Positions 29,037 to 51,795 of a stretch of 64,000 bases of DNA are shown piece by piece. The stretch lies in IMG/VR virus record IMGVR_UViG_3300049215_000771, positions 248,001 to 312,000 of that record; one strand, 5' to 3'. Position numbers and translations under genes: made by a program. Position 1 is the stretch's first letter. The number at the start of each line of letters is the position of its first letter. Under the pieces are notes generated by a model. That model saw only the letters and a program-made list of their open reading frames with translations. It made no database searches and was not told the origin of the DNA.

Positions 29037-30530
29037 ATGTCATCTTGCGAATTTGATTGTCTTGCACAATACCAATGCGGCCAAGTAGAGCAATTGCCGC
29101 CTGGTGCTATTTATGGTCCCTGGGTTCAGATCGGACTTTCAGGAGAAGGTACAAACATCACGGTCGGTAATCATTCCTCCCCACCAGACAACCACGCCTG
29201 CATCAAATCCTTCGAGTACGGATTCTCCGAGGGCGCTGGCATGAAGGTGGAAATTTACGACGAGGAAGGTAGCCGGCTTTCCACCTTCGTCAACCGCATC
29301 AGCAAAACTGTTTGCCAAGCACCAAATGACTACAAGCTGACGGTAAATTTTGGGTGGATCACTGTAGATTGCAATGGAAACACCAACATTATCAGCACCC
29401 AAAATTTCGGCAACACGTTGTACTTCCTCCCACTGAAAATCGAAGTGGCGTTCGAGAACGGCAAGATCAAATACACTATTGAAGGTACAGACCTTCAGGA
29501 CCGCATCTCGGAAACTCGTGTTGAAAACGCCCGTGGGACGGAAGACGCACGAGTGGATTTGAAAACAGCCATTCGTGAACTATTTGCCGATAGCTGTCCA
29601 AAAATTGACGACATTCGATTTACTGACGCCGAACATCCAGATGCGCCAGATGGATGGCACTTCAAAAACAGTGACGGCGGACCAAATGGACCGAGGGCAG
29701 TGTGGACTACAGACCAGCAGAATGCGATGGCGACAACGAGGAAATGGATTTCTCCTTTGCTCACGGAAAACGACAAAGGTGTAATCCTTCAGTGGAAACA
29801 AGATGAGGACCATCCGGTTCTGGTTTTGTTGGAAGACCCAAACCCGGCCCCGGACGAAAACGAAAGCTGCTGCGAGAACAGCATTGGCACCTACATCGTA
29901 AATGGAGGCAACTGCACTCCCGTTCTCGGATTCACACCACAGATCAATTGGGCATTGAGTTCCAACGCCGGCTCCGGTGGTCAGCAGGCGGGTGGCGCAT
30001 CTGCCAACAACCAGCAACAGGTCGGTAGGCCAGACTCCAACATTGAACGTGTTGGTACGCAAACACAATGGCCTGTGAATCAGAACGATAATATGTGGCG
30101 TCCACAAGACTTGATCGTTCACCGGGCACAAGAAGCTAACGCCGCTCACGAAGCCGCCAACCGCTTCCGTGAAGTTCCGCAAAGCATCAACGCCGAGTTG
30201 AAATTGATGGGTGATCCATCCCTAGCCTTCCCATTGGGCGGGTCTGGTTTGGTGGGCAAATCTGTCTCACTCGTCGTCATCAACCCTTTCTACATTCAGG
30301 AATGTGAATGGATCGCTCAACCTCCCTGTAACGAAATGTTGAGCAACAAAAGATGGATGATTATGGGAGCTAATCACCAAATTAGAGAAGGTTCTTACAC
30401 CACAACACTGAAGTTGTTCCTTGCTGTGCCGAACGTGGACCTGGAACCTGGTACGCCGCTTGGTGGACCTGGCTGTGGAAGATTGACCTTCGACAACGAC
30501 CGCAGCGGCGGCAACGACGAGGACAGCTAA
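29037..30530 (+). CDS. Baseplate hub protein (gp27/gpD-like)
   Basis: Between LysM and spike genes; C-terminal AELKLMGDP..WMIMGANHQI..SYTTTLKL. Confidence 0.7.
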   Translation: MSSCEFDCLAQYQCGQVEQLPPGAIYGPWVQIGLSGEGTNITVGNHSSPPDNHACIKSFEYGFSEGAGMKVEIYDEEGSRLSTFVNRISKTVCQAPNDYKLTVNFGWITVDCNGNTNIISTQNFGNTLYFLPLKIEVAFENGKIKYTIEGTDLQDRISETRVENARGTEDARVDLKTAIRELFADSCPKIDDIRFTDAEHPDAPDGWHFKNSDGGPNGPRAVWTTDQQNAMATTRKWISPLLTENDKGVILQWKQDEDHPVLVLLEDPNPAPDENESCCENSIGTYIVNGGNCTPVLGFTPQINWALSSNAGSGGQQAGGASANNQQQVGRPDSNIERVGTQTQWPVNQNDNMWRPQDLIVHRAQEANAAHEAANRFREVPQSINAELKLMGDPSLAFPLGGSGLVGKSVSLVVINPFYIQECEWIAQPPCNEMLSNKRWMIMGANHQIREGSYTTTLKLFLAVPNVDLEPGTPLGGPGCGRLTFDNDRSGGNDEDS

Positions 30531-32731
30531 TGTCAGTAGTAAGCCAACAACAATTCGCCAAACTCGAACAACGACTCAAAGAAATCGAAGTGCGATTCGG
30601 CAACATGCTGTACGATACTCGTGGTGTTGTACAATCAGAATTGAAAGACCGAATGATTGTTCACAGTCAGTCGGAATCTCAATTTGGGTTGTACACCGCC
30701 CTGTGCATCGACACCATTGACATTTGGAAACAAAATCGCATCAGGTTTTTCTGTCCGGCCTTCCACAATCCGAAGCGTCCGATCAAGGAGATGCCCTGGG
30801 CTTACCCTGTTTCCAACATGGGTGGTTTTGACGATTGTGGTTTGACTTGGGTTCCACCTGCTGGTTCAACTGTCTGCATCTTGTTTGAAGCGGGCCAGCG
30901 GTCATCGCCGTTCTACATTGGTACGACCTGGCATCGTAACCGTGGGCCGGGCGGCAACTTGTTTGGCTTCAACATTGACGAATACTACCGAGTTTGGGCT
31001 GGGCATCGTGGCGGCTATTTGGTAGGGCCGGATGACGAATCTCAGGTTTTCCCGCCGTGGAACACAGAAAACTACAACGGATTTGATCTTTCCTCCATCG
31101 TAGATTTCTCCTCCAACCCGGAGGCACAAAAACTAATCACCTATCCAAATATCTACGGCTTCAAAACACCTGAGAAGCACATGATAAAAATGACGGATGG
31201 TGATCCCAAGTGTAATCGACGATGGAAACGATTCGAGATCATGTCCGGTTGTGGCAACTGGATCATGTTGAAAGACGACCACCTTCATTACGCCGGACAG
31301 TGGGCGCATCCACAGTGCGGCGTCAAAGATGGTGAGACTTCCTGCGTACAAGGTGCGTCCAATAGCAGCGAAACCGACATCACCAGACAGCAGGGTTTAT
31401 CTCCTGATGGAACTACTGCGCATGACGTTCCGACTACAAGCGATCCAATCTCGAAACAATTTGCCGATGTAACAAGTTCAACCTTCCAGTCGGCCCCAAA
31501 AACTGAGAATACACCGTGCCAGGGAACGCACAGCAACAGCAGTATCATTGGAGGACATCCAGCAACATCTGCTGATGATTCGCCGTATATAAACTCTCAA
31601 GCCGGCGCTAATCCATTCTTCAAACATCAAAGCGAGTGCCGACCCTATCAGGGACCGGGCACGCCCCAAAACAACAGAATCGACTTACCGCAGTCTGGCA
31701 TTCAGATTATGTCGATTTCCGGCCACACCATTGTTATGGATGATTCAGTAGAAGAACCTTCCGGCGATCCACGTTGGGAACGTGGAATACAACCATTTGA
31801 TTTCGGTTGCAACAATCACTATTCCGGGCGAACGTACTGGAAGTCTGCCACAGGCCACTGCATTGAGATGCGGGATGTAGAAGACCCTCCACACGTCCAA
31901 AACGCTATGTTGCGTGGTGAATTCAACTTCATCAGGCTGCTGACGGCGACTGGCAACAAAATCGAACTAAACGACCACACTGTAGGTGCGCCGAACTGTC
32001 CTGGCTGTCCGCCAAACGTAGCTGGAAACAAGCGTGGCATCATGCTTGCCAGCACAGCGGGTCACACCATCGAGATGCACGACGAACTAAACCAACAGTG
32101 CGGTCCTTGTCGCATGGAAGGTGGCGTACCTGCTCCGATGGCGAACCCAGGAAACGCTTATGTGAGGATTAGGACGGGGTACGGACTGGAGATGATGTAT
32201 CACGACGACAACCGCCAAGACAAAACAGTTCAACAATACATTCAGATTTTCTGTCCGCAGAAAGACAACAAGGTTCGTGGGCCGCACATCATGAGGTTCC
32301 AGGAAGCACCATCTGGACCTGGATTGATTTTCTTGAGGGCTGGCGGAAACTACATCATCATGACCTACGATAACATGATTGAAATCGTAGGAGACATCAA
32401 GAAAAATCCTTCCGACAAGATCGAAATCATCAGCAAATTGAAGCTGGTGTACACCAAGGACTTCTATGTGAACGTAACTGAGAAGTCGCATGTATTTGTG
32501 GCGAAGAATGACATTCTCCTGTTGGCCGGATGTGATTGTTCATCACCGCAGTTCAACGAAATATGCGGTAGCAGTTGCGGCCCATGCGTTGGACCTGTGT
32601 TGGTTTATGTTGGCGGTTGCATCAGGTTGAGCGACCGCATATATGGTTCTTCTTCACTCAGCGCAACACCAGCTAACATCTTCATGTTGGAACCGCTGGT
32701 CAAGTGTCCGCAGGGTGGGGGCTGCGGCTAA
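30530..32731 (+). CDS. Baseplate central spike (gp5/VgrG OB-fold), Cys-rich
   Basis: RIRFFCP..PWAYP..G..WVPPAGSTVCILFEAGQRSSPFYIG OB-fold; repeated S/TGHxIxMxD beta-helix motifs. Confidence 0.8.
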   Translation: MSVVSQQQFAKLEQRLKEIEVRFGNMLYDTRGVVQSELKDRMIVHSQSESQFGLYTALCIDTIDIWKQNRIRFFCPAFHNPKRPIKEMPWAYPVSNMGGFDDCGLTWVPPAGSTVCILFEAGQRSSPFYIGTTWHRNRGPGGNLFGFNIDEYYRVWAGHRGGYLVGPDDESQVFPPWNTENYNGFDLSSIVDFSSNPEAQKLITYPNIYGFKTPEKHMIKMTDGDPKCNRRWKRFEIMSGCGNWIMLKDDHLHYAGQWAHPQCGVKDGETSCVQGASNSSETDITRQQGLSPDGTTAHDVPTTSDPISKQFADVTSSTFQSAPKTENTPCQGTHSNSSIIGGHPATSADDSPYINSQAGANPFFKHQSECRPYQGPGTPQNNRIDLPQSGIQIMSISGHTIVMDDSVEEPSGDPRWERGIQPFDFGCNNHYSGRTYWKSATGHCIEMRDVEDPPHVQNAMLRGEFNFIRLLTATGNKIELNDHTVGAPNCPGCPPNVAGNKRGIMLASTAGHTIEMHDELNQQCGPCRMEGGVPAPMANPGNAYVRIRTGYGLEMMYHDDNRQDKTVQQYIQIFCPQKDNKVRGPHIMRFQEAPSGPGLIFLRAGGNYIIMTYDNMIEIVGDIKKNPSDKIEIISKLKLVYTKDFYVNVTEKSHVFVAKNDILLLAGCDCSSPQFNEICGSSCGPCVGPVLVYVGGCIRLSDRIYGSSSLSATPANIFMLEPLVKCPQGGGCG

Positions 32732-34747: not shown

Positions 34748-37700
34748 ATGGCAACAGTAGCGCCCGATCAAAACCCTCAAGTATTAGACACGGTTCTGTT
34801 CAACCTGCCGACGCCGGATGCCAATGGCTGCTTCCTGGCTGATCCATACATGGTGAACAGCGTTGTGGTCTATTTCGTTGAGAGAGATTTCGCTGATCTG
34901 AATGAAAACCAATATGACAATATCATTCAGGATGACGCCGCCAGTGCTGCCGCTGACGCAGCCGAGGCCGTGGCCTGCGCCAATCCGACTGCCGCCAACA
35001 TTCAACAAGCAAAAACACTTCGGTCACAAGCCAACAGTTTGGCATTCACAAGCCCATTCTACTACAACGATGCCAACCCTGTCACTGTTGTAGGCAATGC
35101 TGATTATCCTGCCTGGCTTACCACAGATCAAAGCAACGCCTTCATCACGCACACTGGCACCGGGCAGTTTCAATATGCCTGGAACAGTTATGGAATGCGT
35201 GAAGGCGACTACTTTGTTTGTTGGACCTGGACGCCCAACCCTGCCGGCGACACCATCTCCAACAGTTTCAAGTTCAATCTGGCTGGCAATTCAGTAGTAA
35301 CAACCAGCATTCCGACGCACTACACACAGCCGGACAAGTATTACACTCTACTGACAACCTACCTGCCGGAAACGTACAAAACACTGATTACTGACACCGA
35401 CCGAACACCAGATGTATTGGACAGGTTCAACCAGGCCGTAGCCCTTGGTTTTACTGCTGTAGAAAACCTAGCCAATCAGATTGTAGACCTTCAGGACGCC
35501 AACAGTACGGCAGAAGCATTCTTGCCCCTTCTGGCCCGTTACTTTGGCATTACCCTGAAAACACAAGACCCAGCACTGTGGAGGCGTCAGATCAAGCAAG
35601 CCATCCCATTGTTCAAGAAGAAGGGAACGATTGGAGGCTTGCAGGAGGCATTGGCTCAGGCTGGAATCAGGATGGCGAAAGTAACCAGGTTGTGGCAGAT
35701 TATTTCTTCATACACTTGGCAGGACGCTTTCACCTATGACGGAACCAATGACACCTGGGAACTTTCCAAGACGCCAGTGATGCCTATTGATCCAACCAAC
35801 TATGCTGTTTACTTGAGGCCAGAAGGACAACCTTCTTACATGCAATTGGGAACAGATTATGTTTCCTTTGGAACTGACATGGACGGCAACCCAACAGTAA
35901 CCTGGGCTGGCAGCGGCCTGATGATCGACCCTATTGACCTTGTTGCTGGCGACATCGTAAAGGTGTTGTATGTTTACAAGTCAGTGCCGGATAGCCCACA
36001 CCAGACCATTGAGAATTATGTGCGCAGCCTGCCATTGGCTGACCAGCGTGACGAAACAAAACAACAATACCCACTAAAAAACTGGAACGTGCGACTCATC
36101 GAGGAGGACGACCCGTTGTTCAATGTGGTCATTCCCGACAAGTTTCCATTCATGGACCCGCTGATCTACGGCAAGGTGCGCACTGAATTCCCGTACTCCG
36201 AGAATGCCTACAACGCCGATGAATACAACGGCAGCATCAGGAATTCCTACAATCCCTGCGACATCGACAAGGACTTCCTCGATCCATGTACGGCCTGCCT
36301 GGGAAGCAAGTTCAATATCGACCTGGAGATCGAGAACTTGTCCAACAATCGCATTCTGGAGGCCCAGGACGTGATATTGGAATTCGTGCCGTTCCACGCC
36401 CAGCTTCAGACCATGAACTTCACTGGCGGGATAACTGAATTTATAACGCCTCCCCTGGAAGAAATTGAGGTTTTGGTGAGTGTTTCGGGCGGTGATTTTG
36501 TGCTTTGCGGCGAGGGACAGATGTGGTTCAACCGTGCCATGAAGGGCGGCTTAACCACCCATATCATCGACCGCTCCATGTTGGCATCGTCGGACATCCC
36601 AATATCAAATCAGGCCGGCACAGCCTACAACGATTACATTACCATCTGGAGTTCCAGTGTTTTGTTCGACAACATAGCCATGTCCACAGATGGTTCGGCT
36701 TTATTGGAAGTTTTTGCACCATCACCAAATGCCGGAACCTACAACCTGAGCAACCCGTCCCGCAACACAGCAGTTGTAACTGGTGCTACGGAACCACTGA
36801 ACACTTCAGCATTTACGTTCAGGCTATCGAACGTCTTGACTTCAGGTACGCTGTGTAACATCTATCAGAACAACTCGGTGACGTTGCTTGATGCGAACAA
36901 TCCGTTCCCTAGTGTTTTGTCCTTGTTTGACGTGACATATAACGGGGCGACGGGACCATATACAGTTTTGATTCCTGCTTACAGCGCCACACATTATCAG
37001 GTGAACAGTGTTTTCCCGGACGGCTCCTTGGAGTTGTTGGATCACGGAGAAACGCTGCCAACATCCAATGTAACCAACGTGGCTTATACCTTGTACGATG
37101 AGAACGGAGCGGTGGTAAGCAGCAGTACGACAGGCGGGTTGACGATAGCAGTACGGGGTCGGGTGCAATCGTTGGATAGTAGCATTCAGGACATCCACAA
37201 CATGATTCGTGGCACCTGTTATGTTGTTACGGGCGGCAGTCAGTATTTGATTGATGGTTTTGTCAGTCCCACTGATGACGCCGAATTCTACATCGACGGG
37301 TACGCAGGCGGGGACATGGCTGGCACGACTTTGACGATTTACCAGCGAATTGTAGACAACGAAATTGGATATTTCAGCCATCGAGGACTGGAGTTGCAGG
37401 TTTCAGGCAACCTGGAAACAACTTTGAACATACAAAATGGTGCAAATCCACCTGCTACGCCGCTAGAAAATAACGACTTCATGGAGAACTACATTGTAAC
37501 AATTAACAGCCAAGATTACTTGATTAGCATGATAAATGGCAACAGCCCACCGGGATACACGACAATTACTTTGGCCGGGCCGGACAATTACTGGAAGACG
37601 TTGGGTGCAGGAGGTACGAGCGTGAATTTCACGGTAACACACTTCACCAAGGAAACGATCACAGTTCCAGGCCAGCAGTTCGATCTACCTGCTCACACCT

Positions 37701-37879
37701 TCCCGACCTATGACCGTGGAGGCCGTGAGGTTATTGACCAGCAAACCAACAACGATCCGCCTGTAGGTGTGTCGATGGTTGGCAAGGGTGCCGGTTTGAC
37801 AGAAGTTGTCGAGCAATCGGAGGGCATTAGTTTTGAAATCGAATGGGCCGATGGCTCGAAGGATCAGGGGAATATATGA
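34748..37879 (+). CDS. Baseplate wedge protein with Tail_P2_I-like domain (gp7-like)
   Basis: FLPLLARYFG..WRRQIKQAIPLFKKKGTIGGL..AL; follows the J gene. Confidence 0.75.
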   Translation: MATVAPDQNPQVLDTVLFNLPTPDANGCFLADPYMVNSVVVYFVERDFADLNENQYDNIIQDDAASAAADAAEAVACANPTAANIQQAKTLRSQANSLAFTSPFYYNDANPVTVVGNADYPAWLTTDQSNAFITHTGTGQFQYAWNSYGMREGDYFVCWTWTPNPAGDTISNSFKFNLAGNSVVTTSIPTHYTQPDKYYTLLTTYLPETYKTLITDTDRTPDVLDRFNQAVALGFTAVENLANQIVDLQDANSTAEAFLPLLARYFGITLKTQDPALWRRQIKQAIPLFKKKGTIGGLQEALAQAGIRMAKVTRLWQIISSYTWQDAFTYDGTNDTWELSKTPVMPIDPTNYAVYLRPEGQPSYMQLGTDYVSFGTDMDGNPTVTWAGSGLMIDPIDLVAGDIVKVLYVYKSVPDSPHQTIENYVRSLPLADQRDETKQQYPLKNWNVRLIEEDDPLFNVVIPDKFPFMDPLIYGKVRTEFPYSENAYNADEYNGSIRNSYNPCDIDKDFLDPCTACLGSKFNIDLEIENLSNNRILEAQDVILEFVPFHAQLQTMNFTGGITEFITPPLEEIEVLVSVSGGDFVLCGEGQMWFNRAMKGGLTTHIIDRSMLASSDIPISNQAGTAYNDYITIWSSSVLFDNIAMSTDGSALLEVFAPSPNAGTYNLSNPSRNTAVVTGATEPLNTSAFTFRLSNVLTSGTLCNIYQNNSVTLLDANNPFPSVLSLFDVTYNGATGPYTVLIPAYSATHYQVNSVFPDGSLELLDHGETLPTSNVTNVAYTLYDENGAVVSSSTTGGLTIAVRGRVQSLDSSIQDIHNMIRGTCYVVTGGSQYLIDGFVSPTDDAEFYIDGYAGGDMAGTTLTIYQRIVDNEIGYFSHRGLELQVSGNLETTLNIQNGANPPATPLENNDFMENYIVTINSQDYLISMINGNSPPGYTTITLAGPDNYWKTLGAGGTSVNFTVTHFTKETITVPGQQFDLPAHTFPTYDRGGREVIDQQTNNDPPVGVSMVGKGAGLTEVVEQSEGISFEIEWADGSKDQGNI

Positions 37880-38355
37880 GAGAAACACATAGCCCGTGTG
37901 AAGTGTACGGCCATGTCCAGGCGATCATCGACTACAAGTCTGGCGAGAGGGCCGTCATTGAGTTTCCGAACACCATTCTTCGCACGGGAAGGAATGCGTT
38001 GGCGGCTTCACTTGCCAATGATGTAGGAGGCCAGTTCAACTTCTATATCTCAAGGATGTTGTTCGGCGACGGCGGCACGGCGGGCGGCGTCGTTAAGTTC
38101 GTAGACACTGCCAGAAACGGGTTGTTTGGTATTACCCGTGCCAACAAGCCAGTTATTGCGCAGGTCGATCCGAACATTCCATCTCAGGTGATTTTCACTT
38201 CTGTCGTCGCCTACAGTGAGGCGAACGGTTACACTTTGAATGAGATGGCGTTGCAGATGAACACAGGGGATTTCTACAGTATGGTGACGTTCCCGGACCT
38301 AACCAAGACAGATCAGATGCAGATTACTTGGAATTGGAGGCTTTCCTTCGTATGA
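37876..38355 (+). CDS. Tail/baseplate fibre-attachment protein
   Basis: NTILRTGR..ISRMLFGDGG..EANG..LNEMAL..KT..ITWNWRL, typical of tail-collar/wedge proteins; ATGA coupling. Confidence 0.6.
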   Translation: MRETHSPCEVYGHVQAIIDYKSGERAVIEFPNTILRTGRNALAASLANDVGGQFNFYISRMLFGDGGTAGGVVKFVDTARNGLFGITRANKPVIAQVDPNIPSQVIFTSVVAYSEANGYTLNEMALQMNTGDFYSMVTFPDLTKTDQMQITWNWRLSFV

Positions 38356-38717
38356 AAAACTACTGGCTCGATAAGAAAAAGAACAACATTCCGACTTGCA
38401 AGGATTTGCAGGAAGCTACTGTTGATTTTCAGAACAACAGGACAACAAAAAACGCCGAGAGGCTATGCGAGATGTTCAAGGTTTTGGTGGAAACCATCTT
38501 GAAGTATTTCGGCGACAAGATCGACCTTGGGGACAGGAAGCAAGTTACTGTCGAGTGCATGGCGACGTGCTTTACCAAACTGAGGCGGTACAATCCACAG
38601 AAGGGGAAGGCGTTCAATTTCTTCACAACAATCATCCTGTCACACATGCGGCAGATATACAGAACGAGGAGGGCTTATGCGGAACTTTTGGCTCGACAAA
38701 ATAACAGAAAAAAGTAA
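38352..38717 (+). CDS. gp55-like sigma-factor region-2 protein with NYWLD leader
   Basis: CFTKLRRYNPQKGKAFNFFTTII matches the region 2.2-2.4 pattern of T4-type late sigma; starts MKNYWLDK. Confidence 0.65.
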   Translation: MKNYWLDKKKNNIPTCKDLQEATVDFQNNRTTKNAERLCEMFKVLVETILKYFGDKIDLGDRKQVTVECMATCFTKLRRYNPQKGKAFNFFTTIILSHMRQIYRTRRAYAELLARQNNRKK

Positions 38718-39084
38718 GGTGCAAACTTGGAACTTCGAGGAAGAACTGAAGAAAATGATGGACAAGGCAGCGATAACTTTGGAGATGCAGTCCGTGAAAG
38801 TCTTGCCGGAACCAAGCTCGACGGAAAACTTGGTGCGCCGTTGGAAGAGAATGGAAATCACTTCCCAATGCGGGCACAGTTGGTTCTTCGCCGACGAGAA
38901 TGCAAGCTGCGGCGCATGGGCGAAGCTGGTGGAGCGGCCCGATTATGGGGTTCCATTGCCGCAGGCATCCGTAAAGCAACAAGATGATGTGCTTCCACCC
39001 TGGAACACTGAAACCTACAACGGAATCGACCTGGAGAATACCGAAGAATTTACGCCGACAAACGGCTGGGAGTGCGATCTATGA
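38677..39084 (+). CDS. Mini-protein carrying spike-derived segments with NFWLD leader
   Basis: GAGGAGGG RBS; RRWKRMEITSQCG and PPWNTETYNGIDL match segments of the 30530 spike. Confidence 0.75.
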   Translation: MRNFWLDKITEKSKVQTWNFEEELKKMMDKAAITLEMQSVKVLPEPSSTENLVRRWKRMEITSQCGHSWFFADENASCGAWAKLVERPDYGVPLPQASVKQQDDVLPPWNTETYNGIDLENTEEFTPTNGWECDL

Positions 39085-39632
39085 AGAACTACTGGTTAGA
39101 CAGGAAAAAAAAGAAAGATTGCTACTGCGACAAATCCGACGAGGGAATGAGGAGGCGGGCAAAGTTGCAGACTGAGTACATGCGGCGTCGGATAGAACGC
39201 CTGCGAAACTTCACCAGGGCTTTGGCCACGGGCGGCTCGGTGGAGATCAATTGGGAAGCCATTGAGAAGGAGGAGCAGGAAGAAAAAATCAAGTTCGAGA
39301 TTCCTGAAATTCCGACCCCTGAAATTCCGCCAATCACAGTAATGTGGGACTTCAACACCCCGCCGCCTGAAATCAACATCCCGCCGATGGTATTCGGGAC
39401 CATCGACATCACTGGTACTGGAATAATGACTCAGATCGACATTTCGCCACCCGTCAATATACCGACTGAGATCAAACTGGTTGCTCCAGACCCGATGCCT
39501 GTCATCAAGGTGGAATGGGGTCTACCGCCTACCATTCCTTTGATAATCACGGATACGTCCGGGCCGATGGGGACCATGCCGTTGGACATTCCCAGCGTGA
39601 TTACGATAAACTCGCCGGAATACCGTATATAA
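39081..39632 (+). CDS. Mini-protein resembling the flanks of the 2048-aa fibre, with NYWLD leader
   Basis: ATGA coupling; NIPPMVF, PPVNIPTEI and VEWGLPPT match fibre NLPPIVF, PPINIPSEI and VNWGPAPT. Confidence 0.7.
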   Translation: MKNYWLDRKKKKDCYCDKSDEGMRRRAKLQTEYMRRRIERLRNFTRALATGGSVEINWEAIEKEEQEEKIKFEIPEIPTPEIPPITVMWDFNTPPPEINIPPMVFGTIDITGTGIMTQIDISPPVNIPTEIKLVAPDPMPVIKVEWGLPPTIPLIITDTSGPMGTMPLDIPSVITINSPEYRI

Positions 39633-39636
39633 CGAT

Positions 39637-40461
39637 ATGCCAGAACTTGATCTGTATCCAGTACCACTGTATAATCCACTGCACCCGTACCATTGGGAGT
39701 ACGACAACCTGCCGTTGCAGAATTTAATCCTTCGGGATGAAATCATCAACGGCCAGGTTGACTACAACTCAGGCATCTTGATGGATGCCGCTGGTACACA
39801 GGGCACATTGGCAAATCGGCTTGCGCAAAGCATCGACCCCAACGGCAGTCTCTTACTTGCCGCCGTCGATTCCGTGATGCACAACATAGCCGCTCACATT
39901 GACGGAACAGCCAATCTGTCTCCAACTGAGATTTCTTCTTTGGCGACACTTGGGTATGTTGTATCGAATCCAGTCCCGTATGTGAGAATGTTGAACGCAG
40001 AACGGGCCAAGCTATCCCTTATTGCTGATGAAGCAACGAACATGACGATTCAGGTGCAAACACCTTCTGTCACTGTTCTGTACACCCAGGGACCGATTAC
40101 CTTTGTTCCATCCGAAACAGTAACATGGTTCGTTTCAGGTAATCAGATACAGGCCAATTTGGGGTTCCCGATTGAAGCAGCACATCGTCACTACTACGAT
40201 CAGGAACCAGTAACGAGCGATTATCAGAACTATCAAACAACGTCGGTCAGCACACCATGTAGGGTGGGCACATTGCGAGTGTACATCAACGGCGTAAGAC
40301 TCAGTGAAACAGCAAACGTCTACGTTCCCTCAGCCATCATCTCGGCCCCGTGGACGCTGAACTCCTTCACGCCAAACGAAGAAGCTGGAACTTTCCAACT
40401 GGAAACTCCCATTACCGCCGCTGACATCATTCGCATCGACTTCGACATTGCTTTGACATAA
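39637..40461 (+). CDS. Tail/baseplate structural protein
   Basis: Beta-rich ORF in the tail operon; C-terminal LRVYINGVRL domain common in tail proteins. Confidence 0.6.
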   Translation: MPELDLYPVPLYNPLHPYHWEYDNLPLQNLILRDEIINGQVDYNSGILMDAAGTQGTLANRLAQSIDPNGSLLLAAVDSVMHNIAAHIDGTANLSPTEISSLATLGYVVSNPVPYVRMLNAERAKLSLIADEATNMTIQVQTPSVTVLYTQGPITFVPSETVTWFVSGNQIQANLGFPIEAAHRHYYDQEPVTSDYQNYQTTSVSTPCRVGTLRVYINGVRLSETANVYVPSAIISAPWTLNSFTPNEEAGTFQLETPITAADIIRIDFDIALT

Positions 40462-40479: not shown

Positions 40480-41019
40480 TTGAGCAATTTATTCACACAT
40501 AAGGACTTGAAGTGTGGGTTCATTATCTTGTGTTCGGAACACAACCCTGATCTTTTACGATACACAGTCCGATCAATTCAGATGCGCTACGGCGAAGCAC
40601 CCATCATCGCCGTAACTGACGCCGGGACAACAGATAACGAGATGAGGGAAATGAAAACATTTTGCCCTGTGTTTAAGGGCAAGAAAACTTTCACTTCCCT
40701 CATCAATGTTGGTTTCCAGCACACCCTGGCCGGTTGGAACTTCGTCGTCATGGCCGGCACAACCATGCGGGCCAGCCTGGATCGCAAAATGTCCTACTTT
40801 GTCAACAGCGAGAAGGACATTTTGTTTCCAATTGCCAACAACAAGTGGAATTTCGTGGAGGCGACCCTGAACGGCCTCCTAATTCACAAGAAAACCTTCA
40901 AGGAGGTCGGCGACATGCCAAACGAAGGCTCCCTGGAGATGGCAAAGGCAGAATGGGCACTGAACGCTGCTGACCGTGGCTGCACTTTCAAAGCCATCAT
41001 AGGAGCCAAACTTTGCTAG
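40480..41019 (+). CDS. Short GT-A (GT2-like) fold protein lacking an obvious DxD
   Basis: GFIIL..LRYTVRSI..IIAVTDA..SLINVGF..WNFVVMAG..NGLLIHKKTFKEVG..EWA.NA..G..F; TTG start. Confidence 0.45.
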   Translation: MSNLFTHKDLKCGFIILCSEHNPDLLRYTVRSIQMRYGEAPIIAVTDAGTTDNEMREMKTFCPVFKGKKTFTSLINVGFQHTLAGWNFVVMAGTTMRASLDRKMSYFVNSEKDILFPIANNKWNFVEATLNGLLIHKKTFKEVGDMPNEGSLEMAKAEWALNAADRGCTFKAIIGAKLC

Positions 41020-41567: not shown

Positions 41568-41624
41568 GGCTTCCTCGTGATATAGAACTCTATTACAGGT
41601 AGGTTGTACCACACAGGAGAAAAT

Positions 41625-45648: not shown

Positions 45649-48600
45649 ATGGCTAATGGCTTTCCTCCAGTTCCGGTTTACCCTGCGGGGTACGATAGTG
45701 ACAAAACTCTGTATTTGGTTTACAACACAGCAGAAACAGTCACCACCCGTGATAATGCGCCCTGGTCTGAATTCATTCACATCAAACCAGTTGATTCCGA
45801 TGCAGATGAAATTTGGGCCAGCAATGGCTTCGCCAATATCGAAGGCGAACTGTTCTACTACGACGCCGTAGGTTACGACGAATTTGGCAAAGTAAACGTC
45901 CTGAAGCGATGCGCCAGGAACCTGGGCGGCTCGCACACTGTATGGAACCCGCAAGGCTCCGACGTTCGTGGTTTCGTCATTGCCGAACACCACAACCAAC
46001 TCGTGGAGGCCATTCTAAACACCCAGGGCTTCATTGGCTACAACTTCACGAATGACTGCTCCACACTTGACTGGAGGATTCGCCATCTCCAGGCTTTGCC
46101 GATCATCGACGATGATTCCAACTGCCCCACAATCGTTCTTGATGTACAAGTCATTAGCCAAGACCCAGCCCAGGGCACCGTCATCCAGTATGCCATTCTC
46201 ATCAATGGCCCATACACTGGATTCCGCCTGGATTTCGGTGACGGAGATTTTACAACCACAGCTACCAACGGATACCACCAATACGCCGCCAATGCGACCA
46301 TCGACCCAATCGTAACCATCGTCAACTCCAACTGCTCGGTAGTAACTTCGCCAATTCAGCGTACTATCGCCACTGAACCTGCGGTCGGGTCTGCTTTGAC
46401 GCCATTTGAAGTTACAATCCCAACGATACCTTCACTACCCCCAATTATTTTCCCGAACGTAATTCCACCATCGAACGCTTTCAACCTGCCGCCAATTGTG
46501 TTCCCGTGCTTGAACATTGGACCTATTGGCCCAATCAACATACCTTCTATCATCACTGTTGAACCACCGATCAACATACCTTCGGAGATTTTCATCACGC
46601 CGGTCACAATCCCGACCGAGATCACGATCACCCCAATCACGATCCCGACCGAGGTTGTCATCACCCCGATCACGATCCCAACACACATAACGATCTCGCC
46701 GGTTACGATCCCGACGCTGATTACTATCACGCCGGTTACGATCAGCCCAATTGACATTCCGACGTTAATCGTCATCACGCCGGTCAGCATCCCGACCGAA
46801 ATCGTCATCACGCCGGTCAGCATCCCGACCGAAATCGTCATCACGCCGGTCAGCATCCCGACATTGATTACGATTACGCCGGTCAACATCCCGAACGTCA
46901 TTACGATCACTCCGATCACAATCCCGAACATCAGGATCACACCGATCTCGATCCCGAACATCACGATCTCGCCGGTCAGCATCCCGACCGTTATCACGAT
47001 CACGCCGGTAACGATCCCGACTCAGATCACGTTCGGGCCAGTGACGATTCCGACTGCGATCACAATTACACCAGTGACGATTCCGACTGCAATCACAATT
47101 ACACCAGTCACAATCCCGACGACAATTACCATCACGCCGGTCAATATCCCGACGAACATTACCATTACGCCGGTCAATATCCCGACACAGATCACGTTCG
47201 GGCCAGTAACGATCCCGACACAGATCACGTTCGGGCCAGTAACGATCCCGACACAGATCACGTTCGGGCCAGTGACGATCCCGACTCAGATCACGATCAC
47301 TCCGATCACGATCCCGAACATCAGGATCACGCCGATCTCGATCCCGAACATCACGATCTCGCCGGTCAGCATCCCGACAACAATCACCATTACGCCGGTC
47401 AACATCCCGACAGTGATAACGATCACGCCGTTCCCGTGCAAAATTCCATCGCAGATCACGATCACTCCGGTCACGATCCCGACGAACATCACTATTACAC
47501 CAATTTCGATACCGAACATCAACATTTCACCGATTTCGATACCGACAAAGATCACAATTACACCAGTCACGATCCCGACGACAATTACCATCACGCCGGT
47601 CAATATCCCGACGAACATCACCATCACGCCGGTTGATATTCCGACGAACATCACCATCACGCCGGTCGCAATCCCGACGAACATCACGATTACGCCGGTC
47701 AACATCCCGACGTTGATTACCATTACGCCGGTCAACATCCCGACAACAATCACCATTACACCAGTGACGATCCCGACTCAGATCACGTTCGGGCCAGTGA
47801 CGATCCCGACTCAGATCACGATCACTCCGATCACGATCCCGAACATCAGGATCACGCCGATCTCGATCCCGAACATCACGATCTCGCCGGTCAGCATCCC
47901 GACAACAATCACCATTACGCCGGTCAACATCCCGACAGTGATAACGATCTCGCCGGTCAACATCCCGACAAACATAACGATCTCGCCGGTTACAATACCG
48001 ACTAACATCACCATTACACCTGTCACGATACCGACGAAGATCACCATTACGCCGGTTGACATCCCGACGAACATCACGATTACGCCGGTCAACATCCCGA
48101 CGTTGATTACCATTACGCCGGTCAACATCCCGACTCAGATCACGTTCGGGCCAGTGACAATCCCGACTCAGATCACGTTCGGACCAGTGACGATCCCGAC
48201 TCAGATCACGATCACTCCGATCACGATCCCGAACATCAGGATCACTCCGATCACGATCCCGAACATCACGATTACGCCGGTCAACATCCCGACGTTGATT
48301 ACCATCACGCCTGCCAACATCCCGACGAACATCACCATCACGCCGGTCAACATCCCGACAAACATCACCATTACGCCGGTTACAATACCGACTAACATCA
48401 CCATTACGCCGGTTACAATACCGACGAAGATCACCATCACTCCGGTCACGATCCCGACAGTGATAACGATCACTCCGGTCACGATCCCGACAGTGATAAC
48501 GATCACTCCGGTCACGATCCCGACAGTGATAACGATCACACCAGTTGACATCCCGACTGCAATCACGATCACTCCGGTTACAATCCCGACGAACATCACC

Positions 48601-51600
48601 ATTACGCCGGTAACGATTCCGACAACGATTACGATTACTCCAGTCACGATTCCGACAAAAATCACCATTACGCCGGTCAACATCCCGACGAACATCACCA
48701 TTACGCCGGTTACAATACCGACGAACATCACTATTACGCCGGTCAACATCCCGACGTTGATTACCATTACGCCGGTCACGATCCCGACGACAATTACCAT
48801 CACGCCGGTCACGATCCCGACAACAATCACCATTACGCCGGTCAACATCCCGACGTTGATTACCATTACGCCGGTCAACATCCCGACGTTGATTACCATT
48901 ACGCCGGTCACGATCCCGACTCAGATCACGTTCGGGCCAGTAACGATCCCGACTCAGATCACGTTCGGGCCAGTGACGATTCCGACTAAGATCACGATTA
49001 CACCGATCACGATTCCGGCAATCAGGATCACGCCGATCTCGATCCCGAATATCACGATTTCACCTGTAAACATCCCGACGACAATTACCATCACGCCGGT
49101 CAACATCCCGACAGCGATCACGATCACGCCAGTTGATATTCCGACAGCGATCACGATCACGCCAGTTGATATTCCGACAGCGATCACGATCACGCCAGTC
49201 AACATCCCAACGAACATCACCATTACGCCGGTCACGATACCGACAGCGATTACCATTACGCCGGTCACGATACCGACAAAGATTACCATTACGCCGGTCA
49301 ACATCCCGACGTTGATTGCGATCACGCCGGTCAACATCCCGACAAACATCACCATCACACCAGTTACGATCCCGACACGAATCACAATCACGCCGGTCAC
49401 GATCCCAACAGCGATCACGATCACGCCGGTCACGATCCCGACGACAATTACCATCACGCCGGTCAACATCCCAACAGCAATCACGATCACGCCGGTCAAC
49501 ATCCCGACTCAGATCACGTTCGGGCCAGTGACGATCCCGACTCAGATCACGTTCGGGCCGGTTACAATTCCGACCAAGATCACGATCACTCCGGTAACGA
49601 TCCCAAACATCAGGATCACACCGATCTCGATCCCGAACATCACGATTACTCCAGTTGATATTCCGACAGCGATCACGATCACGCCGGTCAACATCCCGAC
49701 AGCGATCACCATCACTCCAGTTGATATTCCAACAGCGATCACCATCACGCCGGTCAACATCCCGACAGCGATCACCATCACGCCGGTCAACATCCCGACA
49801 GCGATCACCATCACGCCGGTCACGATCCCGACGTTGATTACCATTACCCCTGTGATAATCCCGACGTTAATTACAATTACGCCGGTCACGATACCGACAA
49901 AAATCACCATCACGCCGGTCGCAATCCCGACGAACATCACCATTACACCGATCACGATCCCGACAGCGATCACTATTACGCCGGTTGATATTCCGACAGC
50001 GATCACTATTACGCCGGTCAACATCCCGACAGCGATCACTATTACGCCGGTCAACATCCCGACAGCGATCACGATCACGCCGGTCACGATCCCAACAGCG
50101 ATCACGATCACGCCGGTCAACATCCCGACAACAATCACCATTACGCCGGTCAACATCCCGACGTTGATTACCATTACACCAATTACAATCCCAACACAAA
50201 TTACGTTCGGACCAGTGACGATCCCGACTCAAATTACGTTCGGGCCAGTGACGATTCCGACTAAGATCACGATCACACCGATCACGATTCCGGCAATCAG
50301 GATCACGCCGATCTCGATCCCAAACATCATGATCTCGCCGATCTCGATACCGACAGTGATTACGATCTCGCCGGTCAATATCCCGACAGCGATCACGATC
50401 ACTCCAGTTGATATTCCGACAGCGATCACGATCACGCCAGTTGATATTCCGACAGCGATCACGATCACGCCGGTCACGATCCCAACAGCGATTACCATTA
50501 CGCCGGTCACGATCCCGACAGCGATTACCATTACGCCGGTCACGATACCGACAGCAATCACCATTACGCCGGTCAACATCCCGACGAGTATCACGATCAC
50601 GCCGATCACGATTCCTGCAATCACGATCACGCCGATCTCAATCCCGAATATCAACATTACGCCGATCTCGATCCCAGCGATCACGATCACACCGATCTCG
50701 ATCCCAGCGATCACGATCACACCGATCTCGATCCCAGCGATCACGATCACACCGATCTCGATTCCGAATGTGAACATCACGCCGATCACGATCCCAAATG
50801 TGAACATCACACCGATCTCGATCCCGGACATTAACATCACGCCGATCACGATCCCAAATGTGAACATCACACCGATCTCGATCCCGGACATTAACATCAC
50901 GCCGATCACGATTCCTGCAATCACGATCACGCCGATCTCGATTCCAGCAATCACGATCACACCGATCTCGATTCCGAATGTGAACATCACGCCGATCTCG
51001 ATACCGGACATCAATATCACGCCGATCACGATTCCTGCAATCACGATCACGCCGATCACGATCCCGGACATCAACATCACGCCGGTCACAATCCCGGACA
51101 TCAACGTGAATTGGGGACCAGCGCCAACAGTTACCTGCACGGTAACGGTGTCGTGTCCTTCTTCGCCGTCAACGACGCCATCTATGGGGTTCCTGGCGGG
51201 TGGGGTAGCTTTGCCGAGCGACTTCCAGGATGGCTTCTCACCGATTGAGGGAACGGTAGAGACAAGTGACATTGGCATTCCAACTGAAATTCAGTTGGTT
51301 GTGCCTGAAATCCCGGACATCCGAGTGATTCACGACATCCCGGCCATGATTGAGGTTGTGGCCCCGAAGATTCCGCCGATTGAGATCACGGGCTGGCAGA
51401 ACATCCCGAAGACCATCGAGGTCATTGCCACGGACATCCCGAAGACCATCGAGGTTGTGGGAGCGCACGCTATTCCGAAGTCGATCTCGATTGAGGGGGC
51501 GTCGAACATCCCAACCGTCATCAGGCTAGAAGTGCCTGTGGACTTCCCGAAGACGATTGTGCTGGACGCCAGCGGCATCCCGGACAAGATTCAAGTTGTC

Positions 51601-51795
51601 GGCATTCCGCCAGTCATTGAATTGATTGGCAACATCCCAACGGAAATCAAACTAACGATGCCTGAGAAACCGGAAGTAGAAATGGTATACAGGGGCGCTC
51701 CTATAGAGATGAAGATCAGCCTGGACACGAGCCGGCTGACAGGCGAGGATCAAAACGCCAACTGTGTAGCGATTGTCCCGTGCAAACCGAGCTAA
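45649..51795 (+). CDS. 2048-aa tail fibre-like protein with Ile/Pro/Thr repeat shaft
   Basis: HHN anchor plus PKD-like LDFGDG, about 1500 aa of 10-11-aa repeats, then a non-repetitive C-domain. Confidence 0.75.
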   Translation: MANGFPPVPVYPAGYDSDKTLYLVYNTAETVTTRDNAPWSEFIHIKPVDSDADEIWASNGFANIEGELFYYDAVGYDEFGKVNVLKRCARNLGGSHTVWNPQGSDVRGFVIAEHHNQLVEAILNTQGFIGYNFTNDCSTLDWRIRHLQALPIIDDDSNCPTIVLDVQVISQDPAQGTVIQYAILINGPYTGFRLDFGDGDFTTTATNGYHQYAANATIDPIVTIVNSNCSVVTSPIQRTIATEPAVGSALTPFEVTIPTIPSLPPIIFPNVIPPSNAFNLPPIVFPCLNIGPIGPINIPSIITVEPPINIPSEIFITPVTIPTEITITPITIPTEVVITPITIPTHITISPVTIPTLITITPVTISPIDIPTLIVITPVSIPTEIVITPVSIPTEIVITPVSIPTLITITPVNIPNVITITPITIPNIRITPISIPNITISPVSIPTVITITPVTIPTQITFGPVTIPTAITITPVTIPTAITITPVTIPTTITITPVNIPTNITITPVNIPTQITFGPVTIPTQITFGPVTIPTQITFGPVTIPTQITITPITIPNIRITPISIPNITISPVSIPTTITITPVNIPTVITITPFPCKIPSQITITPVTIPTNITITPISIPNINISPISIPTKITITPVTIPTTITITPVNIPTNITITPVDIPTNITITPVAIPTNITITPVNIPTLITITPVNIPTTITITPVTIPTQITFGPVTIPTQITITPITIPNIRITPISIPNITISPVSIPTTITITPVNIPTVITISPVNIPTNITISPVTIPTNITITPVTIPTKITITPVDIPTNITITPVNIPTLITITPVNIPTQITFGPVTIPTQITFGPVTIPTQITITPITIPNIRITPITIPNITITPVNIPTLITITPANIPTNITITPVNIPTNITITPVTIPTNITITPVTIPTKITITPVTIPTVITITPVTIPTVITITPVTIPTVITITPVDIPTAITITPVTIPTNITITPVTIPTTITITPVTIPTKITITPVNIPTNITITPVTIPTNITITPVNIPTLITITPVTIPTTITITPVTIPTTITITPVNIPTLITITPVNIPTLITITPVTIPTQITFGPVTIPTQITFGPVTIPTKITITPITIPAIRITPISIPNITISPVNIPTTITITPVNIPTAITITPVDIPTAITITPVDIPTAITITPVNIPTNITITPVTIPTAITITPVTIPTKITITPVNIPTLIAITPVNIPTNITITPVTIPTRITITPVTIPTAITITPVTIPTTITITPVNIPTAITITPVNIPTQITFGPVTIPTQITFGPVTIPTKITITPVTIPNIRITPISIPNITITPVDIPTAITITPVNIPTAITITPVDIPTAITITPVNIPTAITITPVNIPTAITITPVTIPTLITITPVIIPTLITITPVTIPTKITITPVAIPTNITITPITIPTAITITPVDIPTAITITPVNIPTAITITPVNIPTAITITPVTIPTAITITPVNIPTTITITPVNIPTLITITPITIPTQITFGPVTIPTQITFGPVTIPTKITITPITIPAIRITPISIPNIMISPISIPTVITISPVNIPTAITITPVDIPTAITITPVDIPTAITITPVTIPTAITITPVTIPTAITITPVTIPTAITITPVNIPTSITITPITIPAITITPISIPNINITPISIPAITITPISIPAITITPISIPAITITPISIPNVNITPITIPNVNITPISIPDINITPITIPNVNITPISIPDINITPITIPAITITPISIPAITITPISIPNVNITPISIPDINITPITIPAITITPITIPDINITPVTIPDINVNWGPAPTVTCTVTVSCPSSPSTTPSMGFLAGGVALPSDFQDGFSPIEGTVETSDIGIPTEIQLVVPEIPDIRVIHDIPAMIEVVAPKIPPIEITGWQNIPKTIEVIATDIPKTIEVVGAHAIPKSISIEGASNIPTVIRLEVPVDFPKTIVLDASGIPDKIQVVGIPPVIELIGNIPTEIKLTMPEKPEVEMVYRGAPIEMKISLDTSRLTGEDQNANCVAIVPCKPS
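46570..51110 (+). repeat. Tandem 33/30-bp repeat array
   Basis: Units IPTxITITPV(T/N/D), IPTQITFGPVT and IPxIxITPI(S/T); roughly 140 units from span divided by unit length. Confidence 0.95.

What the first reader, a model, noticed from the sequence alone, without database searches (positions are those of the whole stretch)
39081..39632. Repeat-less miniature of the 2048-aa fibre
Seen: FEIPEIPT..IPPI..NIPPMVF..ISPPVNIPTEI aligns with the fibre segment just before its repeats (FEVTIPTI..LPPI..NLPPIVF..VEPPINIPSEI, about 46400-46590). VIKVEWGLPPT and IPTEIKLVAP align with segments just after the repeats (DINVNWGPAPT, IPTEIQLVVP, about 51090-51310). The HHN anchor and PKD domain are absent. Inference: the two flanks of the shaft are joined without the shaft, giving either a trimerisation chaperone/cap or a non-attachable decoy.
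Basis: partly seen in the sequence, partly recalled or inferred. Interest (0 to 1): 0.6.

Follow-up and report, generated by a model that had tools for sequence, protein, structure and literature searches.

The report
Tagged miniature tail-fibre gene
A 533-kb phage from moss metagenomes has a small gene that copies only the two junction pieces flanking the repeat shaft of its giant tail fibre, behind a short address tag; it is one of a set of tagged fragment-copies of the phage's own key late proteins, and it looks more like a mimic than a working fibre.

Summary
Window 39081-39632 (+) encodes a 183-aa protein. Its C-terminal 115 residues are homologous to the "neck" just before the repeat shaft of the 2048-aa fibre (45649-51795) and, more weakly, to the "cap" just after it.

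Four orthologues (100-181 aa) have the same build, and three of them keep a canonical Cys-bearing cap. The baseplate anchor, PKD domain, shaft array and distal domain are all absent. dN/dS is 0.21.

- The protein starts with a decapeptide tag, MKNYWLDKK.
- The two upstream genes carry the same tag and are also partial copies of the phage's own proteins. One copies the late sigma factor; the other is a mosaic of central-spike and capsid pieces.
- Tagged capsid-protein fragments occur in related huge phages.
- The gene sits in a hypervariable insertion hot spot and is missing from most relatives with the same fibre family.

This argues against an essential fibre chaperone. It favours an accessory, tagged interface mimic (decoy or competitor). 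That function is inferred, not shown.

The parts
39081..39632 (+). Mini-fibre gene C (183 aa, ATG start; its start overlaps the stop of gene B as ATGA; GGGAG lies 9 nt upstream)
   Evidence: Orthologues. dN/dS 0.21 against L002.
39081..39116 (+). N-terminal tag MKNYWLDRKKKK (residues 1-12), shared with genes A and B and with unrelated small ORFs in related huge phages
   Evidence: Synonymous differences between the copies show the constraint acts on the peptide.
39117..39281 (+). Charged helical linker (residues 13-67). Present only in the window and L002 copies; replaced by about 6 residues in the other three orthologues
   Evidence: alignment. AF2 helices 20-49 and 58-72, pLDDT 65-80.
39282..39488 (+). 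Neck-module homologue plus 1-2 shaft-type units (residues 68-136): FEIPEIP ... NIPPMVFG.IDI ... NIPTEIKL
   Evidence: hhalign residues 68-136 against the fibre neck profile; BLASTP.
39492..39560 (+). Cap-like WG unit (residues 138-160, VIKVEWGLPPT...). Degenerate: the Cys residues of the canonical cap are lost
   Evidence: cap HMM 13.8 bits, E 0.015; family-level hhalign.
39582..39629 (+). C-terminal unit (residues 168-183, LDIPSVITINSPE...). It aligns with the first half of the true cap of orthologues P0020, P0005 and P0019 and stops where their W-x-PP...C...C part begins
   Evidence: alignment
38352..38717 (+). Tagged gene A (121 aa): partial copy (residues 14-112) of the phage's late sigma factor
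   Evidence: BLASTP E 3e-21 against genome 413426-413965(-) residues 50-146. That paralogue hits Sigma70_r2 at 1.6e-7 and phrog_234 late sigma factor. A itself has sub-threshold sigma hits.
38677..39084 (+). Tagged gene B (135 aa): mosaic with two pieces of the central spike, in swapped order. Its orthologues also carry a capsid-protein piece
45649..51795 (+). Parent tail fibre (2048 aa): anchor with HHN helix, PKD-like domain, neck, shaft, cap, distal domain
   Evidence: AF2 plus Foldseek show a PKD-like fold for residues about 160-235.
46393..46602 (+). Fibre neck module (residues 249-318), conserved in all fibre homologues whatever their distal part
46585..51105 (+). Fibre shaft: about 131 copies of a 33-nt (11-aa) unit
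51061..51162 (+). Fibre cap module (residues 1805-1838; ..NVNWGPAPTVTC.V.VSCPS)
30530..32731 (+). Central spike / hub protein (Phage_base_V OB domain), source of gene B's pieces
37843..38355 (+). Tail-collar-fibre-like gene, left border of the insertion hot spot that holds A, B and C
39637..40461 (+). Conserved 274-aa gene, right border of the hot spot

Best explanation
What it is (shown). The gene encodes an anchor-less, shaft-less miniature of the phage's tail fibre. Its parts, in order, are:
- a 12-residue N-terminal tag;
- a helical charged linker;
- a diverged copy of the fibre's neck module;
- one or two shaft units;
- a degenerate cap.
It is under purifying selection. It occurs in five related huge phages, always in the same place in the baseplate operon. 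It is the third of three adjacent genes that share the tag, and each is a partial copy of one of the phage's own late proteins (late sigma factor; spike and capsid pieces; fibre).

How it most likely works (inferred). It is an interface mimic. It displays the two junction surfaces that every fibre of this family conserves, but it cannot dock on the baseplate and has no distal domain. It would therefore bind whatever pairs with or recognises those surfaces. That could be fibre chains during oligomerisation, or a host or rival-phage factor that recognises them. In either case it competes with the full-length fibre.

The shared tag would give the whole set a common handling, either targeting or turnover. 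This is by analogy with the capsid targeting sequence that is the only conserved part of the diverse T4 internal proteins. Because the gene is accessory, hypervariable and confined to one clade, its role is more likely in conflict (with host defences or co-infecting phages) than in core fibre assembly.
For: Homology to neck and cap with composition controls.

Five-member family with the same build, three with a full Cys-bearing cap. The family is rare: a profile search of 1.84 billion representatives found only these proteins plus fibres.

Synteny: always between the tail-collar-like gene and the 274-aa gene.

Accessory character: the gene is absent from relatives L003, L004, L008, L011, L014, L018 and L030, where the same gap is empty or holds other cargo.

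Fast evolution: A, B and C are 27-50% identical between relatives whose flanking genes are 60-87% identical. dS of C is 0.94 against 0.18 for neighbour B.

Purifying selection: dN/dS 0.21.

The tag acts at peptide level and spreads across the clade: 13 exact-pattern matches in IMG/VR where I estimate about 0.1 by chance, 11 of them at ORF starts, plus a fourth copy in the same genome.

Sibling genes are partial copies: A of the late sigma factor; B of the spike and capsid protein; tagged capsid-protein fragments in relatives.

T4-type head module with an S77 prohead protease and a Gp23-family capsid protein. The T4 CTS paradigm is described in PMC3012670.

Host STAND sensors are known to recognise core phage structural proteins (PMC13581612). 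This is background only.

Contigs from RNA libraries lie 100% identical on the gene and across both of its gene junctions.
Against: There is no direct evidence for binding, for a fold or for a phenotype.
- AF2 leaves the fibre-like part unfolded, in the miniature and in the fibre's own neck (pLDDT 30-50).
- The homotrimer job gave no verdict.
- The window's copy is the most eroded of the family (no Cys, truncated cap), so it may not keep the ancestral interaction.
- The mini necks are no closer to their own phage's fibre than to distant fibres, so there is no co-evolution signal.
- The role of the tag is pure analogy.
- Location in a late structural operon fits a minor virion component equally well.
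- Contigs from RNA libraries do not prove transcription.
Confidence: 0.45

Rival explanations
1. Accessory short fibre or virion decoration. The miniature oligomerises on its own into a short rod built like the shaft ends and is fixed to the particle through its tag or linker instead of the HHN anchor.
For: It keeps exactly the modules that start and end the shaft. It lies inside the baseplate/fibre operon with ATGA-coupled starts. AF2 cannot fold the region as a monomer, as is usual for oligomeric fibres. By my own knowledge, short paralogues of fibre shafts are real fibre segments in T4 (gp36 versus gp37).
Against: It is absent from most relatives with the same baseplate and fibre genes. The same tag heads a sigma-factor fragment and capsid fragments at unrelated genome sites, which does not suggest a baseplate docking peptide. 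The homotrimer prediction gave no verdict. The window's cap is eroded.
Confidence: 0.2
2. Fibre assembly factor. The miniature templates or caps the neck and cap of nascent fibre chains so that the roughly 131-unit shaft registers correctly.
For: It is homologous to just the two shaft boundaries. All five phages that carry it have the long ITP-x-IPT type of array, at which assemblies break.
Against: It has no similarity to known tail-fibre chaperone families. It is not adjacent to the fibre: six genes lie between them. Relatives with 600-1200-aa fibres of the same family lack it. Its divergence is extreme for a factor that must fit a conserved module. Its siblings are copies of non-fibre proteins.
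Confidence: 0.12
3. Decaying remnant of a fibre duplication in which recombination between flanks removed the shaft, with no function of its own.
For: Repeat arrays recombine easily. The window's cap is truncated and has lost its Cys residues.
Against: The ORF is intact in five phages, with dN/dS 0.21 at dS 0.94. The start is conserved and translationally coupled. The tag is conserved. Neck positions are conserved across copies that are 35-49% identical.
Confidence: 0.05
4. Chance resemblance between two Ile/Pro-rich sequences.
For: Genome-wide BLASTP E is only 0.19. The C-terminal half matches many repeat units.
Against: Profile scores are more than 15 sd above composition-preserving column and block shuffles. 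The cap HMM singles out the miniatures among 7566 ORFs. Orthologues carry a textbook cap.
Confidence: 0.02

Closest known systems
T4 internal proteins (IPI, IPII, IPIII and their polymorphic relatives) with the N-terminal capsid targeting sequence
   Same: Unrelated small proteins share only an N-terminal peptide of about 10 residues. They sit in hypervariable clusters, are made late, and occur in a phage with a Gp23-type capsid protein and a gp21-type (S77) prohead protease (PMC3012670).
   Different: The tag has no sequence similarity to the T4 CTS. Cleavage and packaging are untested. The cargoes here are fragments of the phage's own late proteins, not free-standing folds. The cluster sits in the baseplate operon.
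Short paralogues of fibre shafts that form fibre segments (T4 gp36 relative to gp37; long and short fibres of some adenoviruses). From my own knowledge, not tested here
   Same: A small protein shares shaft-type sequence with a much longer fibre encoded nearby.
   Different: Those proteins carry their own attachment ends and are core components present in all relatives. This one lacks the family's anchor and distal domain and is dispensable across the clade.
Tail-fibre assembly chaperones (Tfa/Caudo_TAP, T4 gp38, gp57A). From my own knowledge
   Same: A small protein encoded in the tail module that could act on fibre folding.
   Different: There is no family hit. It is homologous to the fibre itself, which those chaperones are not. 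It does not lie immediately downstream of the fibre. It is absent from most relatives.
Viral pseudosubstrate or mimic decoys such as poxvirus K3L, a truncated eIF2-alpha look-alike. From my own knowledge
   Same: A short, fast-evolving, truncated copy of a larger protein that keeps an interaction surface and lacks the functional remainder.
   Different: K3L mimics a host protein, whereas this one mimics the virus's own structural protein. The target is unknown.

Membership tests
HHN-anchored tail-fibre family of this phage clade (window 45649-51795 and homologues P0007-P0023) | N-terminal anchor domain with the AEHHN helix | tested here: not met
   No such region in any of the five miniatures. 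It is present and invariant in 25 fibres.
HHN-anchored tail-fibre family of this phage clade (window 45649-51795 and homologues P0007-P0023) | PKD-like beta-sandwich after the anchor | tested here: not met
   No Pfam PKD hit on the miniature. The fibre's residues 160-235 fold as PKD-like.
HHN-anchored tail-fibre family of this phage clade (window 45649-51795 and homologues P0007-P0023) | Neck module (...PPIVFPC.D...GPI.VPS.I...) | tested here: met
   hhalign 97.2%, E 4.5e-11, score 64.6 against shuffles of at most 21.1. The miniatures have FG[TC] in place of FPC.
HHN-anchored tail-fibre family of this phage clade (window 45649-51795 and homologues P0007-P0023) | Tandem array of about 11-aa shaft units | tested here: not met
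   TRF finds no array in 39081-39632 and about 131 units in the fibre. The miniatures have 1-3 units.
HHN-anchored tail-fibre family of this phage clade (window 45649-51795 and homologues P0007-P0023) | WG/Cys cap after the shaft | tested here: inconclusive
   Family level: met (96%, E 4e-9). The L001 orthologue scores 29.1 bits. The window's copy scores only 13.8 bits, E 0.015, with no Cys and a truncated end.
HHN-anchored tail-fibre family of this phage clade (window 45649-51795 and homologues P0007-P0023) | C-terminal distal domain (IPSEI...HDIP... to ...VPC) | tested here: not met
   Only repeat-unit-level matches. The miniature ends 20-45 residues after the cap-like unit.
MKNYWLDKK-tagged small proteins of this huge-phage clade (defined here) | Tag at the extreme N-terminus of a small ORF | tested here: met
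MKNYWLDKK-tagged small proteins of this huge-phage clade (defined here) | Body is a partial copy of a larger late protein of the phage | tested here: met
   C/fibre; A/late sigma; B/spike and capsid; L036 and L039 genes/capsid protein. Five short tagged ORFs have no detectable parent.
T4-type CTS-bearing internal proteins | Conserved N-terminal decapeptide as the only shared part of diverse small proteins | tested here: met
   (analogy only; the sequences differ)
T4-type CTS-bearing internal proteins | Removal of the tag by the prohead protease and presence inside the capsid | not testable with these tools
   An S77 protease and a Gp23-family capsid protein exist in the genome. No proteomics are available.
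Tail-fibre assembly chaperones (Caudo_TAP and the like) | Sequence membership | tested here: not met
   No Pfam or PHROG hit.
Tail-fibre assembly chaperones (Caudo_TAP and the like) | Encoded directly downstream of, and co-occurring with, the fibre it serves | tested here: not met
   It lies 6 kb upstream, with six genes between. It is absent from most genomes that have the fibre.

The most novel reading that the evidence does not exclude
The mini-fibre is one visible member of an undescribed system in a clade of huge phages with T4-type heads. The system consists of dozens of small proteins assembled from short, diverged copies of the phage's own core late proteins (major capsid protein, central spike, tail fibre, late sigma factor). 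Some are mosaics of several such proteins. Each is fused to one of two terminal address tags: N-terminal MKNYWLDKK or C-terminal KKYRSIDDPW. They would act as molecular mimics, either to blunt host sensors that recognise the core phage proteome or to poison the assembly and transcription of co-infecting relatives.
Probability: 0.25. Interest if true: 0.9.

Novelty: new variant of a known kind. Interest (0 to 1): 0.72.

Why it matters
If the mimic reading is right, this is a way for a virus to use truncated copies of its own structural and transcription proteins as tools, with short portable tags to handle them. That bears on two open questions.

The first is what the hundreds of small orphan genes in huge phages do. 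The second is how phages cope with host receptors that recognise conserved virion proteins.

Even on the conservative reading, the gene marks out the two conserved junction modules of a widespread but unannotated fibre family. It also offers a natural minimal construct (neck, two units and cap) for solving the fold of an 11-residue-repeat shaft that neither sequence nor fold searches can place.

Tried and rejected
- Pfam, PHROGs and NCBIfam scans of the miniature: no hit.
- tblastn against INPHARED phages: no match.
- ESM Atlas look-alikes: no usable hit. The Atlas's own model has pLDDT 0.49.
- AF2 of the miniature with 3 sequences: fibre-like part at pLDDT about 30.
- AF2 of fibre residues 1-345 with 25 sequences: anchor and PKD-like domains fold, neck and shaft do not. 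The fold of the shared modules therefore remains unknown.
- Complex prediction, three copies of residues 66-183: no verdict (score 0.01 against a mark of 0.42). This counts neither for nor against oligomerisation.
- Sequence search of the PDB with the fibre's anchor and distal parts: nothing.
- Test for a closer match between each miniature and its own phage's fibre neck: no preference. A recent origin from the resident fibre is rejected; the family is an old or fast-evolving branch.
- Contigs carrying fibres P0021 and P0022 do not reach the hot spot, so the link between long arrays and presence of the miniature could not be tested.
- Promoter and terminator scans: no more sites than in shuffles, nothing between A, B, C and their neighbours.
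- Two of the IMG/VR tag-pattern matches (L034, L040) are internal to a 554-aa ORF and were discarded as not being tags.
- Literature search for capsid-fragment decoys found no precedent.

Full report
**Setting.** The window is bases 248001-312000 of a single 532,729-bp contig with GC 0.53. It is a huge phage. It has a T4-type head module: an S77 prohead protease and a Gp23-family capsid protein at genome 337-340 kb. It also has a myovirus-type baseplate module inside the window: a Phage_base_V spike at 30530-32731, gp25/W at 32744-33166 and a Tail_P2_I protein at 34748-37879. DNA and RNA libraries that hold the region come from moss and plant metagenomes.

**The observation.**
- The ORF 39081-39632 (+) gives 183 residues.
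- The best BLASTP HSP joins residues 60-133 to fibre residues 241-316 (36% identity, composition-adjusted E 8e-4). Further weak HSPs fall on shaft units and on the start of the distal domain.
- On its own this is marginal, at E 0.19 against all ORFs of the genome.
- Smith-Waterman scores nevertheless exceed 1000 composition-preserving shuffles for the pre-repeat flank (97 against a maximum of 86) and all but one for the post-repeat flank.

**The family.**
- Word search, a pattern scan of IMG/VR and a profile search of 1.84 billion representatives recovered four orthologues of 100-181 aa. Otherwise they recovered only fibres.
- All five proteins share one plan: the tag MKNYWL(D/E/T)(K/R)K; a linker; a neck-like block (FEIP.IP ... 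IN.PP.(V/I)FG(T/C)IDI); one to three IPTEI-type units; and a WG cap.
- The linker is about 6 residues in three members. In the window and L002 copies it is a 55-residue charged helix.
- In P0020, P0005 and P0019 the cap reads like the fibre consensus, Cys residues included. In the window and L002 copies it is cut short just after the position of the Trp, and an upstream unit (VIKVEWGLPPT) is the best cap-like match.

**The parent fibre family.**
- Homologues of the fibre's first 320 residues are large proteins of 600-3000 aa. Their distal parts are very different (RCC1 propellers, Cys-rich modules and others), yet all keep the same neck after a PKD-like domain.
- A subfamily found in 26 IMG/VR contigs shares the window's cap and distal domain. 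Its shafts use different units of about 11 residues, and total length runs from 604 to more than 2048 aa. Many contigs end inside the array.
- In the window the shaft is about 131 units of 33 nt.
- Neck and cap are therefore the two conserved junction modules of a variable shaft.

**Statistics with controls.**

| Comparison | hhalign probability | E-value | Score | Column shuffles | Other controls |
|---|---|---|---|---|---|
| Three miniatures vs 13-fibre neck profile | 96.4% | 1.1e-9 | 57.8 | 12.6 +/- 2.9 | 4-column blocks 16.5 +/- 3.8 (max 35.6); reversed profile 17.9 |
| Five miniatures vs the same neck profile | 97.2% | 4.5e-11 | 64.6 | max 21.1 | not run |
| Five miniatures vs cap profile (built without the window-clade fibres) | 96.0% | 4e-9 | 45.0 | max 13.8 | 3-column blocks max 26.9 |

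A cap HMM searched against 7566 ORFs of the genome and the fetched loci ranks, after the fibres, the L001 miniature (E 2.4e-7) and then the window's (E 0.015). Everything else has E > 1. Ile/Pro bias does not explain the match.

IPTEIKLVAP is a generic unit. It precedes the WG unit in the miniature but follows it by 50 residues in the fibre, and it aligns with several distal-domain units.

**Is it a gene?**
- The start overlaps the stop of the upstream gene (ATGA), both in the window and in L001.
- dN/dS against L002 is 0.21, and 0.27 for the fibre-like part.
- Contigs from three metatranscriptome libraries lie on it without differences and cross both gene junctions. This is presence in RNA libraries, not proof of transcription.

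**Distribution and tempo.**
- Gene order from the spike to the fibre is conserved in more than a dozen relatives.
- A, B and C occur only in the window's close clade (window, L001, L002, L041/L042 and the ERZ27310456 contig).
- Elsewhere the gap between the tail-collar-like gene and the 274-aa gene is either 15-190 nt long or holds unrelated cargo. That cargo includes a 170-aa and a 90-aa gene pair, a 329-aa gene I read from its sequence as a homing endonuclease (no family scan was run on these inserts), a small ORF I read as helix-turn-helix, and 45-aa ORFs that start with a tag-like peptide.
- Between the window and L001 or L041 the flanking genes are 60-87% identical, while A, B and C are 27-50% identical.
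- Against L002, dS is 0.94 for C but 0.18 for B and 0.29 for the start of the next gene. The C allele has therefore been exchanged.

**The tag and the siblings.**
- A (38352-38717), B (38677-39084) and C all begin M(K/R)N(Y/F)WLD(K/R). The codons differ at synonymous sites, so selection acts on the peptide. A fourth copy lies at genome 378486-378647.
- A degenerate back-translation of the tag has 13 exact matches in IMG/VR, where I estimate about 0.1 by chance. Eleven are at the start of small ORFs, in contigs that share other genes with this phage. The tagged ORFs sit at several different genome positions.
- A aligns over residues 14-112 with residues 50-146 of a 178-aa protein of the same genome. 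That protein is a late sigma factor by Pfam and PHROGs (E 3e-21). A lacks both ends of it.
- B carries two pieces of the central spike in swapped order (E 1e-7 and 1e-5). Its orthologues add a 32-residue copy of capsid-protein residues 314-345 (75% identical, E 2.6e-10) and, in L001, a piece of an 855-aa protein.
- In relatives, three tagged ORFs copy capsid-protein residues 4-55 or 113-226.
- Thus every tagged gene with a detectable parent is a fragment, or a mosaic of fragments, of a late protein of the phage. C is the fibre member of that set.

**Mechanism.**
- Shown: the architecture, the homology, purifying selection, accessory status, and the company the gene keeps.
- Inferred: the protein keeps surfaces conserved in all fibres and loses every part needed to attach or to bind a receptor. 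It should therefore act by occupying whatever those surfaces contact.
- The hot-spot location, rapid turnover and patchy distribution are the signature of conflict genes rather than assembly parts. Fibres of the same family assemble in phages that lack it. I therefore rank interface mimic/competitor first (0.45), an accessory mini-rod second (0.2), an assembly factor third (0.12), a remnant fourth (0.05) and chance last (0.02).
- The tag's role is taken by analogy from T4, where diverse internal proteins share only a capsid targeting sequence (PMC3012670).
- That host receptors recognise conserved virion proteins is established (PMC13581612). No decoy made of the phage's own fragments is described in what I could search.

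**Limits.**
- No fold was obtained for the shared modules.
- The oligomer job gave no verdict.
- There is no cultured host.
- The window's copy is the most eroded family member.

**Novelty.** The closest known kind is a set of small late proteins with a shared terminal address peptide, as with the T4 CTS. This would be a new variant of that kind, in which the cargo is cut from the phage's own late proteins. If the wider pattern (see the items noticed in passing) turns out to be a coherent system, it would be new in kind.

Noticed in passing
window 38352-38717 (+): Gene A is a tagged, doubly truncated paralogue of the phage's late sigma factor (genome 413426-413965, minus strand). It keeps the sigma region-2-like core and lacks about 49 N-terminal and 32 C-terminal residues of the parent.
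   Followed up: partly
window 38677-39084 (+); L041:9525-10004; L001:9825-10088: Gene B and its orthologues are mosaics of short copies of several proteins behind the tag: central-spike pieces, capsid-protein residues 314-345 and, in L001, a piece of an 855-aa protein. They end in a conserved LPPWNTETY...GWECDL.
   Followed up: partly
genome outside the window: 58150-58437, 351357-351617, 453411-453812, 475461-475757(-), 517817-518062, 518216-518509, 524328-524810: Seven small ORFs copy different segments of the 478-aa Gp23-family capsid protein (36-87% identity). Together they cover most of its length. Whether they are expressed is unknown.
   Followed up: partly
genome outside the window, 24 sites (nearest at 247090, minus strand, about 900 nt before the window start); L050, L051, L053, L054, L056: There is a second terminal tag, (K)KKYRSIDDPW(E). 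In this genome it ends 22 of the 24 small frames (88-253 aa, stop to stop) that carry the core motif, among them five of the seven capsid-fragment ORFs (a sixth has it near its N-terminus). It recurs in other huge-phage contigs, three times again behind capsid C-terminal fragments. It loosely resembles the N-terminal tag (K-x-Y ... hydrophobic-D ... W).
   Followed up: partly
window 38355-39637 and the same gap in L003-L030: The gap between the tail-collar-like gene and the 274-aa gene is an insertion hot spot. It is empty in some relatives. In others it holds a 90-aa plus 170-aa gene pair, a 329-aa gene I read as a homing endonuclease, a small ORF I read as helix-turn-helix, or 45-aa ORFs with a tag-like start. 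These readings are by eye; no family scan was run on the inserts.
   Followed up: partly
window 39339-39359 (residues 87-93 of C): VMWDFNT in the window's miniature matches AAWDFNT of the capsid protein and MWDFNT at the start of the capsid piece in B orthologues. The other four miniatures lack it. It may be a small conversion patch or a coincidence.
   Followed up: no
window 39081-39632 against L002:400-945: Synonymous divergence of the mini-fibre gene (dS 0.94) is about five times that of the adjacent gene B (0.18) in the same pair of contigs. This implies allele replacement by recombination.
   Followed up: partly
window 42315-43367, 43367-45628, 45649-51795: Three consecutive genes (350, 753 and 2048 aa) share the HHN-helix anchor followed by a PKD or PKD-like domain, so the baseplate probably carries three kinds of appendage. 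A relative (L004) has two 1.7-kaa fibres in tandem.
   Followed up: partly
window 14499-28160 (+): A 4553-aa ORF with no Pfam hit lies just upstream of the baseplate genes, in a region of strong AT skew. It is possibly a tape-measure or other giant virion protein.
   Followed up: no
window 56091-57095 (+) and 54857-55840 (+): A full-length Volactin-family actin homologue (E 1e-72) and a family-9 glycosyltransferase lie downstream of the fibre. Both are conserved at that place in relatives (L003, L043).
   Followed up: partly
window 41016-41612 (-): A nucleoside 2-deoxyribosyltransferase-like gene lies on the opposite strand inside the tail-fibre operon (sub-threshold Pfam hits). It is conserved in L041 and the ERZ27310456 contig.
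   Followed up: no
L003 (GCA_905231925.1, 619-kb contig): A related huge phage sits in a Symbiodinium microadriaticum assembly. There, eukaryotic gene calling fused several phage genes into one 2153-aa 'colH' protein. Its true fibre is only 621 aa.
   Followed up: partly
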